Virus record (IMG/VR): IMGVR_UViG_3300036766_002289
Location: 186,001 to 250,000 of that record
Reading direction: 5' to 3' (one strand)
Length of the DNA: 64,000 nucleotides
Shown: positions 6,532 to 60,207 of the stretch, piece by piece
Layout of the letters: each line of letters starts with the position of its first letter
How positions within the stretch are numbered: position 1 is the first letter of the stretch
The notes under the pieces: generated by a model
Told to the model about the DNA's origin: nothing
The model's database searches: none
What the model saw: the letters and a program-made list of their open reading frames with translations, nothing else
Made by a program: the position numbers and the translations under genes

Positions 6532-7164
6532 ATGCGATTCAGCGACTGGTTATTAAAAGAAGAAGCACCACAGGTAACAACCGTAAAAGGCACTCCTGAT
6601 AATTTCTACTTGGTTTTCAATAATGGCCAACAAAGTGGCAAAGTCAATAACATCGTGGCCGTTCCTGGTAATCCAGGTATGTATCAAATTAAAAGCCAAG
6701 ATCAAATGAATCCCTATTCAGTCAGCATGAGTCCACAAATTGGTCAAAAATTAATCAGCTTTTCATGGAAACAACAGCCAAAACCCAATATGCAAAAAAT
6801 ATTGGCTTGGCCTACTCCCACTATCCCACAACCACCTCCATATTGGACCCCAGAAATGATGGAAATGAACCATGACAATGCTGGTAAGTACATATCCAAT
6901 AAGCTTTTACAACAAGGAATGGAAGCAAAGAAAGCTGGGATTATAGGAAATAAGATATCTGAATTTATATTTTACTATAGTCCATATCCACCTAGAGTTA
7001 AGAACAGGGTATTAATGAACTTAGGCAATAAGTATCCTGATGCGGATACAATGGAGTTGATTAAGGTTGCGGATGAACATGCAAAGCAGGCTGAGCCTTA
7101 CTTTAGGATGTTAAAGGCAAAGGGCTACGTTTCTGCTTTACAAAGTCCCAAACCAGTAGTATAA
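6532..7164 (+). CDS. Hypothetical protein, candidate head-internal virion protein
   Basis: N-terminus MRFSDWLLKE; ATATATA 4 nt upstream of ATG. Confidence 0.4.
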   Translation: MRFSDWLLKEEAPQVTTVKGTPDNFYLVFNNGQQSGKVNNIVAVPGNPGMYQIKSQDQMNPYSVSMSPQIGQKLISFSWKQQPKPNMQKILAWPTPTIPQPPPYWTPEMMEMNHDNAGKYISNKLLQQGMEAKKAGIIGNKISEFIFYYSPYPPRVKNRVLMNLGNKYPDADTMELIKVADEHAKQAEPYFRMLKAKGYVSALQSPKPVV

Positions 7165-7818
7165 TATTTGGATGATAATCTACAGCGAAGATGGCGACAT
7201 TTGGGAAGCCATGATTTGGATTGAGCGTGAAGTTTATATTGGTATGGGTCAATCCAAAGAAAAAGCTAAAATTGCTTTACTTGAGCATCTTAAAGGTATC
7301 AGGCCAATTTATTTGGAACAAATTAGAAATGCTCAAGAAATTATTGGCAAAATTGAGGAACTTATTCATGAATCAGTGTGATCTTTGTGACAAGCCTACG
7401 CCTATAAGCTCCTATTTCTGTGATGAATGTGGTAAGATTTGCCGAAGAAGTAAAAATAAGGCTCAGCCTGACGTATATTGTGGCAAGCCTGCTGCTTGGG
7501 GTAGTTGTGGATTCTGTCAAGAACACTGGCAGGAGGAATGTAACGAAATTGACACTGTGATGGAGTTTGCTGATGATGCATTCCATGCAGGAGAGTTTGA
7601 TAAGGTTAATAACCGTTTAAAGGAACTTAATGTGCCTAACTTGAGTTCCCAGATGTGTGTGACATGGCTCACTGTGAGTAAGTGGGCAGAAAAAAACCTT
7701 CCATATAGGCCAGAATTCTTCAAGAAGTGTTATGACAGATTAGTAGAAATTCGTGGCGTTGAAGCAGCTAATAAGTTGACAAAGTATCGTGGCGTGGATG
7801 AAGAAATTCAAAAAATGC

Positions 7819-11170: not shown

Positions 11171-12013
11171 ATGATTAAACTAAGTAACGGGCATGAATTT
11201 AAATATTGTGCAGCATCAGGTGCATTAGGTTACGACGGAAAAGGATATTTTTGGGAAGCCCCTTTCCGATGGCTTAAAATACTACGCCCTGAAGAATTTA
11301 CAATAATCACAAAAACCATTACCCTTGAACCACGAAAAGGAGAGTATCGTTGGTGGAAGCCTTGGAAGACTATTAAGATTAAAAATGATTACGTCATCAA
11401 TGCAATGGGATTGCCAAATGATGGACTTAAATGGTGGTTGAAAAATGTTTATGGTAGATTAAACTATGATACAATTGTCTCAGTAGCCGCGTGGACTCCA
11501 TTTGAAGCCAGAACAATAGCACATGAGCTTAACTATTGTGGTATCCAAGCCATTGAACTTAATCTTTCTTGCCCAAATGTAGAACATCCAGACAGTTTCC
11601 CTATAATCAAGGAGTTTTTGAAATTTACTAGGCATCCTGTGATATTGAAAATCGAATATGATGAGGATTATATTGCCCTTTTAAAAGAATTTCATGGTAA
11701 GATTGAAGCCGTTGACGCAATTAATACTATCCCTTTTTATGATATGGCAGTAGGACAATCTCCACTTCACCCATTAGAAGGTGGAATTAGTGGTCCATTA
11801 ATTTCATTTAAATCAAAGAAAATTTTGCGTGATATTAAAGCCCATTATCCTGGTGTTCAGGTGATTAGTGGTGGTGGAATTTACACTCTTGAAGAGGCGA
11901 AACGCAGGATTGCTATGAAGGCAGATGCGATATCGTTTGGTACAGTTTTTCTTAAGAAATGTTGGTTGCCAAATTTAATAATTAAAAAGCTTGCCGAACA
12001 TGATAGAAAATAA
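11171..12013 (+). CDS. pyrD: Dihydroorotate dehydrogenase-like protein
   Basis: AASG, TKTIT, INAMGLPNDG, ELNLSCPN, AINT, GGISGP, SGGGI motifs. Confidence 0.85.
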   Translation: MIKLSNGHEFKYCAASGALGYDGKGYFWEAPFRWLKILRPEEFTIITKTITLEPRKGEYRWWKPWKTIKIKNDYVINAMGLPNDGLKWWLKNVYGRLNYDTIVSVAAWTPFEARTIAHELNYCGIQAIELNLSCPNVEHPDSFPIIKEFLKFTRHPVILKIEYDEDYIALLKEFHGKIEAVDAINTIPFYDMAVGQSPLHPLEGGISGPLISFKSKKILRDIKAHYPGVQVISGGGIYTLEEAKRRIAMKADAISFGTVFLKKCWLPNLIIKKLAEHDRK

Positions 12014-12034
12014 ATGCAATGCTTATATATTTAC

Positions 12035-12856
12035 ATGAAACAAAACTTAATTGGAAAAATTTATGGGTATCTTGAAGTAATTTCTTGCCTTGGTAGTGAT
12101 CGTAATGGTAAAAAGGCCGCTGTGCATTGGATGTGTAGGTGCAAATGTGGCAATACCGTTGCTGTAACCACTGCCAAACTTAATTTTGGTTTACGTAAAA
12201 GTTGCGGGTGTCTGAAAGTGGAAAAAGCGATAATAAATGGAAAAATAGGGAGTGAGAAGAATAAAACACATAATGGCACCTATACTCCAGAATATAAAAC
12301 ATGGACAATGATTAAAAGTAGATGTAATAATCCAAAATCAAGTGGCTACGAGAATTATGGAGGAAGGGGTATTAAAATTTGTGAGAGATGGAACAACTCA
12401 TTCCAGAACTTTTTAGATGATATGGGGAAGAAGCCAAATACAGATTTTTGCATTGATAGAATAAATGTCAATGAAGGATATTACAAGGATAATTGCCAAT
12501 GGACTAGTTTAAAATCTCAACAAAATAATAAAAGAACAAATATTTATATAGAATTTGGGGGCAATAAAGCAACGTTGGCAGAATGGGCCACCAAAATTGG
12601 AATATGCGGGGCCACTTTAAGAAAACGCATGAAGAATATGTCAATTGAAGACGCCCTAACATCGCCAAAGAAAATGGTGGGCCGCAGTCGTAAACTATCA
12701 ACTGATATTAACTTGAATGCGGTTATTAAAAATTTAAATTTAGCATTAAATCAGATTGGTAGAAATTGCCTTATTCAGCATTTTGGAGAAGCTGGTACTG
12801 ATTTGGTGAATTCTATTAAGGTTTTATCCGAGTTAGTCGATGTAAACATAGCTTAG
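12035..12856 (+). CDS. HNH-type phage homing endonuclease
   Basis: WMCRCKCG, KSCGC, RCNNP...YGGRGIKICERW, IDRINVNEGY...NCQW. Confidence 0.85.
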   Translation: MKQNLIGKIYGYLEVISCLGSDRNGKKAAVHWMCRCKCGNTVAVTTAKLNFGLRKSCGCLKVEKAIINGKIGSEKNKTHNGTYTPEYKTWTMIKSRCNNPKSSGYENYGGRGIKICERWNNSFQNFLDDMGKKPNTDFCIDRINVNEGYYKDNCQWTSLKSQQNNKRTNIYIEFGGNKATLAEWATKIGICGATLRKRMKNMSIEDALTSPKKMVGRSRKLSTDINLNAVIKNLNLALNQIGRNCLIQHFGEAGTDLVNSIKVLSELVDVNIA

Positions 12857-13266: not shown

Positions 13267-13684
13267 AATGATGAAAAAATGGTATGAAGAAGTTGTAATT
13301 AATGGCCTATTGCATCATAAGTTTCTTGCAAATGGTTTACTTTATTTAATGGATGATTATAAAGTTACGCCACCGCTACCACAAATTTGCTATAACCACT
13401 ACTGCCGTAAGGTTTTAGGGGAAGAATACCATTCCACAATGTTTGGAACAAGAGAAACTGGTTTTCCAGATTGCTGGTTATGCAATGAGTGTTGGGCAAA
13501 GTTTGATGGCCAAAAGATGAGGGGACGATTTGCGATGATCGGATACTCCCACAATCAGAGTGTGTCTATATTAGCTGCCATTGAAAGAGATTGCGGGAAG
13601 GAATTATTTGAACTTGGTAGGCCAGAAGATGAATCTCGTTATACTGAATCTGTCACCGAATGGGTTGAATGGCAAAATCCCTGG

Positions 13685-13700
13685 ATAGCTTAGTTGTACC
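13685..13700 (+). promoter_or_regulatory. 16-bp motif copy 2
   Basis: ATAGCTTAGTTGTACC upstream of the sigma-like gene. Confidence 0.75.
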
Positions 13701-13739
13701 GATGTTGGCGTGAACAAATAATAGTTAAGAGGGCAAATC

Positions 13740-14753
13740 ATGCACGGCATCCGTAGTATTAATCTGAAGACTTCCGAAATGCAGGAAATGCAGGAAATCA
13801 TGTCCAAGGGCAATACTCTGCTCAAAGAGTGTGCTGAGATGTTGGGCATGAGCAAAGGGGAGTTTCGTGGCAAGCTTTTCAACCGAAAGCTCGACACTAG
13901 CAACCTTTCCGAAGAACAATTCCAAAAGCTAGAAGCAGCTAAGCCCCACATCATGGCAGTCCATGATAAGTGCGAGCTTAAGATTCTTAGTGGTTTCACC
14001 AGAATGGTGCAAAAGCAAGCTAAGGTTGCTGCTTCCAACAGTAGTGATCCCAAGAACGTTTTCTATGAATTCGAGCAAGTTGGTATGCTCGCAGTGTTAG
14101 ACTCCATTTATGGTTACACTAACACGAATATCAAGTTCATTACCTATGTCTGGAAGATTGTCCGCCGCCGCATTAATCTCACGATTAATCGTCTCAATCC
14201 GTTCTGTCCTTTGACGAATGAAGCTATGAATCTTGTGCAGGGTTTTGAAGCGACCAAGGTTAAGTTTAATCGTCAAGTCAATACTGAGGAAGTCGTTGAA
14301 GCGATGGGCATTACGGCTGCTCAGCGTGAAGTTTTGTTTGCTGCAACAACTAAGGTAGTGAACGAATTGCAGGCAGGGCCACAAAGTAATTCGGATCATG
14401 ATTTTGTTGCTAGTGACTACACTGCAATGCGTCGTGGAATTGATGGTGATTACCAAGAAGTTTCCCTTATCCGTAAGGATGCACGTCAAGCAATCAAGAA
14501 TGCAGAATTGAGCGATATTGAATTGCATCTTCTCTTGGGAGAAATGTTCCCTTACACTGGTTGGAGGGAAGATATTGCTGGCAAGTTCATCAATCCAAGG
14601 ACTGGCAAGCGGTATACTCGGGAAGTGACTGGCATCATCGACCGTGCCAAGGATAAGGTGCGCAAGGCTATCAAGTTCCCTCCTGAAGCCCCGAAGGAAA
14701 ATCCGATTATTGACCAGATTTTCGATGAATTGAGTGGCAAATTAGCAGTTTAA
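13740..14753 (+). CDS. Divergent sigma70-family RNA polymerase sigma factor
   Basis: Region 2-like EFEQVGMLAVLDSIYGY...KFITYVWKIVRRRI; region 3-like RQVNTEEVVEAMGIT; region 4-like LSDIELHLL...TREVTGIIDRAKDKVRKAI. Confidence 0.7.
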   Translation: MHGIRSINLKTSEMQEMQEIMSKGNTLLKECAEMLGMSKGEFRGKLFNRKLDTSNLSEEQFQKLEAAKPHIMAVHDKCELKILSGFTRMVQKQAKVAASNSSDPKNVFYEFEQVGMLAVLDSIYGYTNTNIKFITYVWKIVRRRINLTINRLNPFCPLTNEAMNLVQGFEATKVKFNRQVNTEEVVEAMGITAAQREVLFAATTKVVNELQAGPQSNSDHDFVASDYTAMRRGIDGDYQEVSLIRKDARQAIKNAELSDIELHLLLGEMFPYTGWREDIAGKFINPRTGKRYTREVTGIIDRAKDKVRKAIKFPPEAPKENPIIDQIFDELSGKLAV

Positions 14754-16239: not shown

Positions 16240-16255
16240 ATAGCCTAGTTGTACC
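16240..16255 (+). promoter_or_regulatory. 16-bp motif copy 3 (ATAGCCTAGTTGTACC)
   Basis: One mismatch to consensus; upstream of RuvB-like gene. Confidence 0.75.
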
Positions 16256-16275
16256 AGTCTATGCGGAGGTGCTAT

Positions 16276-17346
16276 ATGAGTCAGCTTGAAAAGGTGTTTT
16301 TCCCGATTAATAGTGACCCGCCTTTTGCGGATGATCGACGTGCATATCTTGATTCCACTAATCCAGTTTCGCCTTACTTTGGATTTGTTGGAAATAAGCG
16401 TGCTGTCGATAAGCTAATTCGTATAGACTTTGAGGCCCTTGGCCGCTACAACCACTGTTGCAGTGACCTGTCCGTAGCTTTCCTTGGCCAAGCGGGTTGC
16501 GGTAAGACTGAATTGGCCCGCCGTCATGCCAAGGCCAATAAGCTTCCTTATGTGGAAATCTCTCCTAAAGCGATTAAGACTTGCCATGATCTTCTCATGG
16601 AAATTGCAAGAGTCTGTGCTGCTTCTGGTCTTCCCCTTATTGAAGTAGGTCGCGCACAAAACTATTGGATTCCCCCTTGTAACGTCTTTATTGACGAAGT
16701 TCATGCACTTGCACCGCCTGTAGTGCAAGGTCTACTTAAAGCAACCGAATACAATGACGCAATCCTTGTAACCGACAAGGGTTACACTGCCGACTGTAAA
16801 CGTGTTCACTGGCTCATTGCAACTACCGACCGTGGCAAGTTGTTCGATGCTTTTGATACTCGTTTCAGCAAGGTTATTCTTAATCTTTATACTAAAGATG
16901 AAGTTGCGAAGATTGTTCAGTTTAACAATCCAGATTGGACTTTTGATATCTGTCAGTTGGTTGCACATTATTGTGGACGGATTCCGCGTGAAGCATTGGC
17001 TTTTGCACGGGAAATGAAATTGGAACACAATATGCACTCTGATCTTACTTGGCGTCAAGTAGGGCAGCGTATTGCAAGTGACAACGAAATTGACGAATTT
17101 GGAATGAGTTACAAGCGTTTGGCTATCCTTAAGGCACTTGGGCATGGGCCAATTGCTGAGAAGCGACTGCCGCTTGTAATTGGTGTCAAGGTTGAAGAAC
17201 TAGATAAGTTTATCCTTCCTTGGTTGGTTGCTGATACAGACGATCAGCCAGCTTTGGTTGGGGTCTGTAATAAGGGATATTGCTTGACTGATGCTGGTAT
17301 TGCTGAGTTGAAGTTGAGGAAACTTCCCTATAAGGAGGCAGCATGA
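16276..17346 (+). CDS. ruvB: RuvB-like AAA+ ATPase (Holliday junction branch-migration helicase family)
   Basis: Walker A GQAGCGKT, Walker B FIDEVH, ATT, DTRF Arg finger, GRIPREA sensor II, IDEFG and winged-helix-like C-terminus; GGAGG before ATG 16276. Confidence 0.8.
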   Translation: MSQLEKVFFPINSDPPFADDRRAYLDSTNPVSPYFGFVGNKRAVDKLIRIDFEALGRYNHCCSDLSVAFLGQAGCGKTELARRHAKANKLPYVEISPKAIKTCHDLLMEIARVCAASGLPLIEVGRAQNYWIPPCNVFIDEVHALAPPVVQGLLKATEYNDAILVTDKGYTADCKRVHWLIATTDRGKLFDAFDTRFSKVILNLYTKDEVAKIVQFNNPDWTFDICQLVAHYCGRIPREALAFAREMKLEHNMHSDLTWRQVGQRIASDNEIDEFGMSYKRLAILKALGHGPIAEKRLPLVIGVKVEELDKFILPWLVADTDDQPALVGVCNKGYCLTDAGIAELKLRKLPYKEAA

Positions 17347-42637: not shown

Positions 42638-43126
42638 ATGATCCAAATAGCAATTATACTAAGTAAAAGACTCTGTGAACCAAGGGCCGCTCATGCCGAA
42701 AGAGTCGCTAATTTATTAGGCAACGCTTCCGAGGTTGAAATCTCCGCTGCGTATCTCCATGATATCATTGAAGATAGGGCGATGGATGAAGACGAACTAC
42801 TAGAAATAATGGGAGAGGAAGTAACTGATATTGTTTTAGAGCTTACAGACACTTCTTTTAGTAAGATCAGGGAATATGAATATTTAAGGTGGGCGAGTCA
42901 TTCGGCCAAGAGGATTAAGTTGGCAGATCGTATTGACAATATTAAGAAGAGAATGACCAGTAATCATGTAATGTATTATGCATTGGAGTCTGAGAGGTTA
43001 TTGGGGGTTCTCAAGGGCACGGATAGGTGTTTAGAATGTATTTTACGTTCATTTGTGGTAGAATTGAAGGCAAGGTGTGCTAAATACCCACATGAAAACC
43101 TTCTTGGAAAGTTTGGTTCAGCCTAG
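42638..43126 (+). CDS. RelA/SpoT-type HD hydrolase (small alarmone hydrolase-like)
   Basis: HAERVA, AAYLHDIIED, V.ELTD, IKLADRIDN. Confidence 0.75.
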   Translation: MIQIAIILSKRLCEPRAAHAERVANLLGNASEVEISAAYLHDIIEDRAMDEDELLEIMGEEVTDIVLELTDTSFSKIREYEYLRWASHSAKRIKLADRIDNIKKRMTSNHVMYYALESERLLGVLKGTDRCLECILRSFVVELKARCAKYPHENLLGKFGSA

Positions 43127-60146: not shown

Positions 60147-60162
60147 ATAGCTTAGTTGTACC
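60147..60162 (+). promoter_or_regulatory. 16-bp motif copy 10
   Basis: ATAGCTTAGTTGTACC, at gene junction. Confidence 0.75.
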
Positions 60163-60207
60163 TTTACAAATGTGGTTTTTGTGGTAGAATATAAAAGGAG
60201 GCTCATT

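What the first reader, a model, noticed from the sequence alone, without database searches (positions are those of the whole stretch)
13740..14753. Divergent phage sigma70-like factor placed directly under the 16-bp motif
Seen: recognisable but degenerate regions 2, 3 and 4, with an apparent insertion (FINPRTGKRY) in the region-4 HTH and a novel N-terminus. Inference: an early-expressed sigma that redirects host RNAP, either to the GTAG-extended promoters or back to the 16-bp motif (autoregulation).
Basis: partly seen in the sequence, partly recalled or inferred. Interest (0 to 1): 0.6.

Follow-up and report, generated by a model that had tools for sequence, protein, structure and literature searches.

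The report
Divergent megaphage sigma factor gene
This gene encodes a real but very divergent sigma factor of a roughly 590-kb sediment phage that has no RNA polymerase of its own, so it most likely steers the host polymerase to phage promoters; this is an expected strategy for giant phages, carried out here by an unstudied variant.

Summary
The ORF at 13740-14753 (+, 337 aa) is real and conserved: 31 metagenomic homologues, plus the 595-kb phage LR756511.1. Family scans stay below their cut-offs. A family profile, an AlphaFold model and two fold searches all place it in the sigma-70 family, with the layout sigma1.2/sigma2, sigma3, 3.2 linker, sigma4.

- **N-terminus:** it is not novel. Residues 1-154 superpose on Thermus sigmaA regions 1.2-2.4.
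- **HTH insertion:** confirmed. It is a hairpin of about 8-14 residues in the region-4 HTH turn, with invariant residues across the family.
- **Core binding:** a controlled complex prediction supports binding to the beta' clamp helices (0.76 against 0.03).
- **Phage RNAP:** none was found in this record or in two relatives.
- **The 16-bp motif:** it is real (97 forward, 4 reverse) and lies at 13686-13701, 38 nt before the ATG. It is a single block that abuts 5' leaders. Relatives carry variants of it (AGCTGTAC).
- **An extra element in relatives:** all relatives also have an ECF-like GAACC-N15-17-GTCT promoter before this gene.
- **Other sigmas:** the phage has two more sigma genes.
- **GTAG-extended promoters:** these are canonical sigma-70 type and fit the host sigma or the 275-aa phage sigma better than this protein.

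Which promoter this sigma reads is unresolved. The 16-bp motif, which would make the gene autoregulated, is the leading candidate at about 40%.

The parts
13686..13701 (+). Copy of the 16-bp motif (core CTTAGTTGTACC). It contains the stop codon (13691-13693) of the upstream ORF and ends 38 nt before the sigma ATG. It is a candidate promoter block spanning about -17 to +2.
   Evidence: Genome-wide it occurs 97 times forward and 4 times reverse. It is a single conserved block with no second element.
13724..13729 (+). Shine-Dalgarno-like AGAGGG, 10 nt before the ATG.
   Evidence: Read directly from the sequence.
13740..14753 (+). Sigma-70-family gene, 337 aa (P0001).
13740..13970 (+). Residues 1-77: helical N-terminal part that superposes on sigmaA region 1.2 and its short non-conserved region.
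   Evidence: model 1-154 against Taq sigmaA 99-271. In one search, residues 2-4 and 40-48 touch beta' 284-288 in the predicted complex.
13971..14198 (+). Residues 78-153: sigma2 (regions 2.1-2.4). The helix 104-125 is predicted to bind the beta' clamp helices. The Y136 and W138 region corresponds to sigma-70 region 2.3/2.4.
   Evidence: (profile alignments to 3mzy, 9dvs, 8b3z).
14196..14219 (+). Residues 153-160, NPFCPLTN: the family's most conserved block (C156, P157, L158, T159 invariant), at the region 2.4/3.0 junction. In sigma-70 this position reads the extended -10.
   Evidence: The functional reading is an inference.
14217..14348 (+). Residues 160-203: sigma3 three-helix domain.
   Evidence: Sigma70_r3, E 0.12; alignment to SigA1 through region 3.
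14349..14471 (+). Residues 204-244: low-confidence linker (region 3.2, the 'sigma finger') with the invariant D226-Y227-T228 and R231.
14472..14675 (+). Residues 245-312: sigma4 four-helix domain containing the HTH.
   Evidence: top rows are region-4 domains, Z 5.5-6.8. Negative controls: a sequence profile finds no sigma4 in the PDB, and Foldseek finds nothing significant.
14586..14627 (+). Residues 283-296: conserved basic hairpin inserted in the HTH turn (about 8 extra residues compared with sigma-70). It has a weak likeness to the NPxTxxPYT loop of SBDS domain II.
7137..7165 (+). Strong sigma-70-type promoter (TTTACA-N17-TATAAT, 11 of 12 matches, preceded by GTAG). No terminator-like site lies on the + strand between it and the sigma gene, so read-through could supply the first sigma transcripts.

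Best explanation
The gene encodes a functional alternative sigma factor of a roughly 590-kb phage. The domain order is sigma1.2/sigma2, sigma3, sigma finger, sigma4.

**Shown or directly supported.**
- It has the sigma fold.
- It belongs to a conserved family that sits in a conserved gene module.
- Its region-2.2-like helix (residues 104-125) is predicted to dock on the beta' clamp helices of a bacterial core RNAP.
- No phage RNAP was detected.

**Inferred.**
- It displaces the host primary sigma on host core and directs it to phage promoters.
- In this genome it is transcribed from the 16-bp motif at 13686-13701. That motif behaves as a single-block promoter running up to the transcription start. 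Read-through from the sigma-70-type promoter at 7137-7165 is a possible initial source of transcript.

**Most likely target, at about 40%: the 16-bp motif class itself.** That is about 100 sites, mostly before arrays of small ORFs, and it would make the gene positively autoregulated. The reasons are:
- It is the only one of the three phage sigmas with a sigma3/3.0 region and a 1.2-like part. Promoters that lack a -35 element and carry a conserved block down to +1 normally need these parts.
- In the relative that lacks both the motif and the small ECF-like sigma, this family is, by elimination, the best candidate reader of that phage's main promoter class.
- The same class of promoter precedes this gene in all relatives.

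The conserved basic hairpin in the HTH turn would add DNA contacts next to the recognition helix.

**What the confidence covers.** The figure given is for the core claim: a working sigma that binds host core RNAP and is expressed from the motif. It does not cover the choice of target promoter.
For: **Fold and domains:**

**Family and synteny:** RNA ligase, DUF6166, sigma, AAA ATPase, ArdC-N/MPTase, Macro.

**Core binding:** predicted complex 0.76 against a best control of 0.03. That mark was reached by 58 of 80 solved complexes and 2 of 110 mismatched pairs. Runs agree in at least 84% of contacts, and partner pLDDT is at least 86. The interface is beta' 278-298 with sigma 102-120.

**No RNAP genes:**

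**Motif properties**
- 97 forward and 4 reverse.
- A single block, tATAGCTTAGTTGTACCAa, with no second element.
- The commonest gap from the motif to a start codon is 9 nt, and in some copies the SD follows the motif directly.
- It is concentrated at 240-320 kb of the record, among small ORFs.
- Variants lie before the orthologous sigma gene in four relatives.
- LR756511.1 has 134 copies of AGCTGTAC against 8 in the control.

**Relative G002**
- It has only two recognisable sigmas.
- Its 322-aa one keeps sigma-70-like -35-reading residues.
- Its main promoter class is TTTCCGAACC-N16-GGTCTTCC: 55 sites against 16 in the control.

**GAACC-N15-17-GTCT:** it lies directly before this gene in six relative loci. 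L021 repeats L015's site, and the element is otherwise at chance level in LR756511.1 and G001.

**Literature:** RNAP-less jumbo phages encode sigma homologues thought to use the host RNAP (PMC7824862; PMC13282480).
Against: - No experiment or transcript data exist: no RNA run holds this DNA.
- The host is unknown. E. coli beta' was used, and the complex score may reflect memory of solved sigma-beta' complexes.
- The presence pattern favours another reader. The motif and the 160-aa ECF-like sigma are both present in G000, G001 and LR756511.1 and both absent from G002. That small sigma sits behind a canonical sigma-70 promoter, as an early gene would.
- In this genome the GAACC/GTCT element before the gene is degenerate, and the class is at chance level.
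- The likeness between the motif and the G002 -10 block is weak (CTTnnTTG only) and fades in LR756511.1.
- The key sigma-70 melting residues are only partly kept (Y kept; the W433/W434 pair replaced).
- The region-4 fold matches are of middling Z, and the sequence profile finds no sigma4.
- About 200 kb of the source contig lies outside the held record and was not searched.
Confidence: 0.6

Rival explanations
1. Second-tier sigma in a cascade. Host sigmaA transcribes the 160-aa ECF-like phage sigma. That sigma reads the 16-bp motif, and in relatives the ECF-like promoter before this gene, and so switches this gene on. This protein then reads a later class, such as the TATATA sites that lack a -35 element and lie before large genes.
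For: - The small sigma has TTGACT-N17-TATACT here and TTGCAT-N17-TATAAC in LR756511.1.
- The motif and the small sigma co-occur in three genomes and are both absent from G002.
- TATATA is enriched upstream of genes in all three genomes: 26 against 1, 48 against 4, and 22 against 0. In G002 it lies before large genes at 300-420 kb, with no -35 element.
- This sigma family is present in all three genomes.
- A clamp-loader-like AAA gene is conserved just downstream. This recalls clamp-coupled late transcription in T4, but that is an analogy only.
Against: - The co-occurrence pattern rests on one negative genome.
- ECF-type sigmas lack sigma3 and normally need a -35 element, which the motif lacks.
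- It does not explain who reads the 55 ECF-like promoters of G002, which has no small sigma.
- TATATA may simply be the -10 element of host-type promoters.
Confidence: 0.27
2. It directs host RNAP to the GTAG-extended sigma-70-type promoters.
For: These promoters exist: about 8-10 good ones, for example at window 7137-7165, near 43055 and near 60181. The protein has the full sigma2, sigma3 and sigma4 layout of primary-type sigmas.
Against: - Their -35 and -10 elements are canonical.
- This protein lacks three of the five sigma-70 residues that read the -35 element, and it lacks the W433/W434 pair (read from the sequence and from the alignments).
- The phage's 275-aa sigma and its orthologues keep (S/T)KER(V/I)RQ and FSTYA.W.
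- The host sigmaA would read these promoters unaided.
Confidence: 0.05
3. The 16-bp motif is not a promoter. It could be an RNA-level signal (a processing site or a translation signal between genes) or a recombination/cassette boundary. In that case its position before the gene says nothing about which factor starts transcription.
For: - The motif often contains the stop codon of the preceding gene.
- It sits at a fixed 9 nt from start codons that have no SD.
- It has no recognisable -35/-10 pair.
Against: - Its strict strand bias, position and copy number fit a promoter.
- The three phage sigmas need promoters, and no other abundant motif was found in this genome.
- No conserved hairpin follows it: mean folding energy is -6.2 against -5.3 kcal/mol for shuffles.
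Confidence: 0.1
4. It has the sigma fold but does not act as a sigma. It could be a decoy that occupies host core, or a DNA-binding regulator that has lost initiation activity.
For: - Every single-sequence match is far below the curated cut-offs.
- The melting residues are partly replaced.
- The HTH turn is disrupted by an insertion.
Against: - All four sigma modules are kept and conserved over 31-75% identity.
- The invariant residues lie at the DNA-facing 2.4/3.0 junction, the finger and the recognition helix.
- The phage lineage has no RNAP and has abundant non-host promoters.
Confidence: 0.06

Closest known systems
Primary and primary-like (group 1/2) sigma-70 factors, e.g. Thermus sigmaA and cyanobacterial SigA
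   Same: Same domain order. Residues 1-154 superpose on regions 1.2-2.4. Sigma3, a 3.2 linker with an acidic/aromatic tip motif, and sigma4 follow. It is predicted to dock on the beta' clamp helices.
   Different: - It has no region 1.1 and only 337 aa, with 12-19% identity in the structural alignments.
- The W433/W434 pair, Q437 and T440 are replaced.
- Three of the five -35-reading residues are replaced.
- The HTH turn carries a conserved insertion of about 8 residues.
- It scores below the Pfam and NCBIfam cut-offs.
RpoD-like sigma factors of RNAP-less ('group 2') jumbo phages (PMC7824862; PMC13282480)
   Same: It is encoded by a phage that lacks an RNAP. It is presumed to recruit host core to phage promoters. 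It coexists with other phage sigma genes.
   Different: That literature describes the RpoD-like versions as close to cellular RpoD. Here the 275-aa paralogue fits that description, not this protein. This family was found only in metagenomic megaphages of about 0.53-0.6 Mb. Among 50,697 deposited phage records, only LR756511.1 has it.
Phage sigma cascades: Bacillus phage SPO1 gp28 and gp33/34, T4 gp55, phiEco32 gp36 (recalled from the literature, not tested here)
   Same: Phage-encoded sigmas replace the host sigma in turn. Some read a single element near -10 without a -35 element.
   Different: Those proteins are small and lack sigma3/sigma4 or are ECF-like. This one keeps all the modules. No sequence match to any of them was seen.
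ECF (group 4) sigma factors and their GGAAC/GTCT-type promoters
   Same: The promoter conserved before this gene in relatives, which is also the main class in G002, looks ECF-type: GAACC-N16-GTCT with fixed spacing. The sigma4 fold matches include many ECF region-4 domains.
   Different: The protein has a sigma3 domain and a 1.2-like N-terminus, which ECF sigmas lack.
SBDS domain II (Pfam PF09377)
   Same: The loop NP-x-T-x-x-(P/R)-Y-T between two helices matches weakly: 19 of 28 members, best E 5e-4, and E 0.2 against PDB SBDS.
   Different: Only about 33 residues match. The fold search of the domain gives sigma4, not SBDS. It is probably a convergent loop.

Membership tests
Sigma-70 family | Sigma2 domain fold with the region 2.1-2.4 helices | tested here: met
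   The profile hits 3mzy at E 4e-6 and 8b3z at E 7.5e-4 over regions 2.2-2.4. VIA gives Z 12.2, rmsd 3.2 A over 145 residues, against sigmaA domain 2. 15 of 28 members hit Pfam Sigma70_r2.
Sigma-70 family | Scores above the curated family thresholds (Pfam, NCBIfam) | tested here: not met
   The best scores are 24.9 bits against a cut-off of 189.6 (TIGR02479), 13 against 25.3 (Sigma70_r3) and 11.8 against 42.9 (TIGR02937). The Sigma70_r2 genome scan also missed this gene.
Sigma-70 family | Sigma4 domain with an HTH that reads the -35 element and binds the beta flap | tested here: inconclusive
   The domain model's top rows are region-4 domains, but Z is only 5.5-6.8. Foldseek and the sequence profile give nothing significant. 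The HTH turn carries an insertion. Flap binding was not tested.
Sigma-70 family | Binds core RNAP through the beta' clamp helices | tested here: met
   This is a prediction only. ipSAE is 0.76 against a best control of 0.03. The interface is beta' 278-298 with sigma 102-120. E. coli beta' was used because the host is unknown, and the score may reflect memory of solved complexes.
Sigma-70 family | Confers promoter-specific initiation on core RNAP | not testable with these tools
   This needs in vitro transcription or in vivo 5'-end mapping. No RNA run holds this DNA.
Group 1 (primary) sigma | Region 1.1, plus the canonical residues that read the -10 and -35 elements | tested here: not met
   The model starts at the equivalent of region 1.2. 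W433/W434, Q437, T440, R586, R588 and Q589 are replaced (sequence and the alignments).
Group 4 (ECF) sigma | Only sigma2 and sigma4, with no sigma3 and no region 1.2 | tested here: not met
   A three-helix sigma3 (residues 160-203) and a 1.2-like N-terminus are present.
Group 3 (FliA/WhiG-type) sigma | Membership of the FliA/WhiG subfamily model | tested here: not met
   TIGR02479 gives 24.9 bits against a cut-off of 189.6, for residues 104-223 only.

The most novel reading that the evidence does not exclude
This sigma family reads a contiguous 16-19-bp promoter block that has no -35 element and runs to the transcription start. It would do so with its 1.2-like part, sigma2, the invariant NPFCPLTN junction and the basic hairpin inserted in its HTH, and it would activate its own gene. 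Within one phage lineage, the same family would have switched between a strictly spaced ECF-like bipartite promoter (G002 type) and this single-block promoter (G000 and LR756511.1 type).
Probability: 0.3. Interest if true: 0.6.

Novelty: new variant of a known kind. Interest (0 to 1): 0.42.

Why it matters
Phages of 0.5-0.6 Mb are known almost only from metagenomes, and how they programme transcription is unknown. This locus offers three things to work with.

- **A testable parts list:** three phage sigma genes, no phage polymerase, and three or four separable promoter classes. These are the 16-bp block, canonical sigma-70-type promoters with a GT(A/G)G extension, TATATA sites without a -35 element, and, in relatives, an ECF-like bipartite class.
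- **An orthogonal sigma/promoter pair:** if this protein reads the 16-bp block, the pair would have an unusual architecture.
- **A case of promoter-specificity change:** the change would have happened within one sigma family.

If it does not read the block, the finding is still a correct functional annotation for a family that is now mostly labelled hypothetical.

Tried and rejected
- **Near-identical DNA in deposited phages:** none found.
- **RNA evidence:** the one run search found only DNA runs from sediment and freshwater metagenomes and no RNA holder. Read laying was therefore not used, and no transcription starts could be mapped.
- **Paralogues of this family in the record:** none.
- **Phage RNAP:** Pfam Rpb2_6, Rpb1_2 and the T7-type RNA_pol family gave no significant match in G000, LR756511.1, G001 or G002. 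The T7-type model rang in no control genome, so that negative is weak. Very divergent phage polymerases could also escape.
- **Second conserved element near the motif:** information content showed none upstream or downstream.
- **5' hairpin after the motif:** tested in the subclass with the AATTAGG extension. Mean energy was -6.2 against -5.3 kcal/mol for shuffles, so it is not supported.
- **C-terminal domain by sequence profile and by Foldseek:** nothing significant. Only the exhaustive structural search showed sigma4.
- **ECF-like pattern in this genome:** at chance level, 2+3 against about 1 per shuffle. The best candidate before the gene is a two-mismatch GAATC-N16-GTCA, which I do not count.
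- **The most abundant 10-mer of G002:** it turned out to be a 33-bp coding tandem repeat, not a promoter.
- **More genomes carrying the small sigma in IMG/VR:** only G001 was found, so the co-occurrence test stays at four genomes.
- **The large representative-protein search:** not run. The word search and the fold evidence settled the family, and no claim here rests on absence of relatives.
Full report
**Where the window comes from.** The window is bases 186,001-250,000 of a 390,039-bp IMG/VR virus record. That record is the last ~390 kb of a 590,099-bp contig from a JGI sediment metagenome (run search). The IMG/VR label 'provirus' is probably a trimming artefact, because relatives are single contigs of 595-597 kb. 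GC content is 39%. Nearly all genes in this part lie on the + strand.

**The ORF and its family.** ORF 13740-14753 (+) encodes 337 aa.
- Single-sequence scans give only sub-threshold sigma hits: TIGR02479 E 1.4e-5, phrog_15865 E 2e-4, Sigma70_r3 E 0.12.
- The word-indexed search found 31 proteins at 31-75% identity. All come from metagenomes, and two are labelled sigma subunit by JGI.
- Among 50,697 phage records, only the 595-kb uncultured phage LR756511.1 encodes a relative, at 48% identity.
- The 28-sequence alignment has 24 invariant columns. They cluster at Y126, at N150-T159 (NRLNPFCPLT), at D226-Y227-T228 and R231, and at Y272-G274-W275, N285, T293-R294.

**Fold.**
- A profile of the family hits solved sigma factors: sigma-H 3mzy at E 4e-6 over regions 2.2-2.4, and Synechococcus SigA1 9dvs at E 8e-5 from region 2.1 through region 3 into the 3.2 motif.
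- The AlphaFold2 model (pLDDT 77) has helices in the sigma pattern and a disordered stretch at 205-244.
- Foldseek's best 50 rows are nearly all primary or group-2 sigma chains, aligned over the full length. The best E is 1.9e-5. TM scores are low because the model's domains are not arranged as in holoenzyme.
- VIA gives Z 12-13.
- Model residues 1-154 superpose on Thermus aquaticus sigmaA 99-271 at rmsd 3.2 A over 145 residues. The N-terminus is therefore the region 1.2/non-conserved-region module, not a new domain.
- The C-terminal 81 residues folded alone have pLDDT 85. Foldseek and the sequence profile found nothing significant for them.
- An exhaustive structural comparison with 48,161 chains put region-4 domains in almost all of the top 23 rows: WhiG, SigW, SigH, sigma32, sigmaE region 4 on -35 DNA, Taq sigmaA 364-431. 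Z is 5.5-6.8, which is middling, so I treat the sigma4 assignment as likely rather than proven.

**The insertion.** In the model, helix 275-282 and helix 297-312 are the two HTH helices. Between them lies a short two-stranded hairpin.
- Read against the sigma-70 pattern, the flanks match: the first HTH helix ends in ...GKF, and the recognition helix begins TRE.
- About 8 residues (INPRTGKR) are extra.
- The loop is basic, and its N285, T288, R291, T293 and R294 are invariant or nearly so.
- It weakly resembles the NPxTxxPYT loop of SBDS domain II. I take that to be convergence.
- Of the five sigma-70 residues that read the -35 element, only the R584 and E585 equivalents remain. This comes from the sequence and from textbook knowledge of sigma-70.

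**Core binding.** Residues 1-160 were tested against E. coli beta' 240-330.
- The score was 0.76 in three runs against a best control of 0.03.
- Runs agreed in at least 84% of contacts, and partner pLDDT was at least 86.
- The mark was reached by 58 of 80 solved complexes and by 2 of 110 mismatched pairs.
- The interface, beta' 278-298 with sigma 102-120, is the canonical region-2.2/clamp-helix contact.
- This supports binding but does not show it, and it may reflect memory of solved holoenzymes.

**No phage polymerase.** No beta-like, beta'-like or T7-type polymerase was detected in G000, LR756511.1, G001 or G002. This fits what reviews say of RNAP-less jumbo phages (PMC7824862; PMC13282480).

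**The 16-bp motif.**
- The core CTTAGTTGTACC occurs 97 times forward and 4 times reverse at up to one mismatch.
- Its logo is tATAGCTTAGTTGTACCAa, with no second conserved block within 30 nt upstream or 60 nt downstream.
- It usually overlaps or follows the previous gene's stop codon.
- The commonest distance to a start codon is 9 nt, and in some copies a Shine-Dalgarno sequence follows it directly. If it is a promoter, the start site must therefore lie at its 3' edge.
- It is concentrated at 240-320 kb of the record, in arrays of small ORFs.
- The copy at 13686-13701 contains the stop of ORF 13268-13693 and ends 38 nt before the sigma ATG.
- No + strand terminator-like site lies between the strong sigma-70-type promoter at 7137-7165 and the gene.

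**Relatives.** Gene order around the sigma gene is conserved: RNA ligase, DUF6166, sigma, AAA ATPase, ArdC-N/MPTase, Macro.
- A variant of the motif precedes the sigma gene in four relatives.
- LR756511.1 carries 134 copies of AGCTGTAC against 8 in the control.
- Six relative loci have a match to GAACC-N15-17-GTCT directly before this gene: L014, L015, L016, L017, L018 and L022. L021 carries the same upstream sequence as L015.
- In L014, L015, L016 and L018 it is the only + strand match in 12-41 kb.
- Across the whole of LR756511.1 and G001 the pattern is at chance level.
- In the 533-kb relative G002, whose sigma is 35% identical, the same ECF-like promoter is the main class. It has a tight consensus and fixed spacing, with 55 sites against 16 in the control, including arrays of small genes. 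The AG[CT]TGTAC motif is at control level there.
- In this genome the ECF-like element before the gene is not recognisable.

**Other sigmas.**
- G000 also encodes a 275-aa sigma (regions 2 and 4, no room for sigma3) at 160,245-161,072, and a 160-aa ECF-like sigma at 11,801-12,283.
- The 275-aa protein and its orthologues keep sigma-70-like -35 and -10 reading residues.
- The 160-aa gene lies behind canonical sigma-70 promoters both here and in LR756511.1.
- G002 has orthologues of the 337-aa and 275-aa proteins but none of the 160-aa one.

**Promoter classes.**
- About 8-10 canonical promoters with a GT(A/G)G extension before the -10 element.
- TATATA without a -35 element, which is enriched upstream of genes in all three genomes. 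In G002 it lies before large genes.

**Assignment.** The evidence splits.
- **Mechanism favours this protein as reader of the motif.** It is the only phage sigma with sigma3/3.0 and a 1.2-like part. In G002 it is, by elimination, the candidate reader of the main phage promoter class. That class also precedes its own gene, which implies autoregulation.
- **Co-occurrence favours the 160-aa sigma as reader of the motif.** That would make this protein a later-tier sigma.
- **My estimates for the target of the 337-aa sigma:** the 16-bp motif class about 40%; a later class in the cascade rival about 27%; the GTAG-extended promoters about 5%. Separately, I put the motif not being a promoter at all at about 10%, and the protein not acting as a sigma at about 6%.

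**Verdict.** It is unproven on timing and target, and its GTAG option is unlikely.

Noticed in passing
window 12852, 13689, 16244, 34586, 34772, 36678, 58568, 58783, 59702, 60151 (starts of the 12-nt core): Ten copies of the 16-bp motif lie in the window, all on the + strand. Genome-wide the motif is densest at record positions 280-316 kb, where nearly every small ORF has one. A subclass there carries a further conserved extension, AATTAGGnTGTGATT, directly after the motif.
   Followed up: partly
window 7137-7165; also near 43055 and 60181: Canonical sigma-70-type promoters (TTTACA/TTGACA-N17-TAnAAT) are preceded by GT(A/G)G. At 60151-60190 one follows a 16-bp motif directly.
   Followed up: partly
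G000:160245-161072 and G000:11801-12283 (outside the window; loci L019, L020): There are two further phage sigma genes. One is a 275-aa protein with sigma-70-like -35-reading residues, downstream of a ClpX-like gene and an M50 peptidase gene. The other is a 160-aa ECF-like protein behind a TTGACT-N17-TATACT promoter.
   Followed up: partly
LR756511.1 about 190,500-191,300 (- strand): The orthologue of the 275-aa sigma is split between two reading frames, between region 2 and region 4. This could be a frameshift, an assembly error or a pseudogene.
   Followed up: no
L014, L015, L016, L017, L018, L022, just upstream of the sigma orthologue: An ECF-like GAACC-N15-17-GTCT promoter is conserved before the sigma gene in all relatives. 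In L016 its -10 position coincides with the motif (GTCTTAGCTGTAC).
   Followed up: yes
G002:294,600-299,100: A long array of a 33-bp repeat inside coding sequence (an 11-residue protein repeat). It is the most abundant 10-mer of that genome and is not a promoter.
   Followed up: partly
G000, LR756511.1 and G002, upstream regions genome-wide: TATATA without a -35 element is strongly enriched upstream of genes. In G002 it lies mostly before large genes at 300-420 kb, on both strands. It is a candidate late-promoter class.
   Followed up: partly
window 12014-12856: An HNH endonuclease gene (phrog_374, E 5e-63) sits two genes upstream of the sigma gene. It is followed directly by a copy of the 16-bp motif at 12852.
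   Followed up: no
window 16249-17346: An AAA+ ATPase with a weak clamp-loader/RuvB-like signature. It is conserved downstream of the sigma gene in all relatives and is itself preceded by a motif copy at 16244.
   Followed up: no
whole record: IMG/VR labels the record a 390-kb 'provirus', but it is the 3' two-thirds of a 590,099-bp contig, and relatives are 595-597 kb. About 200 kb of the phage is missing from the held genome.
   Followed up: partly
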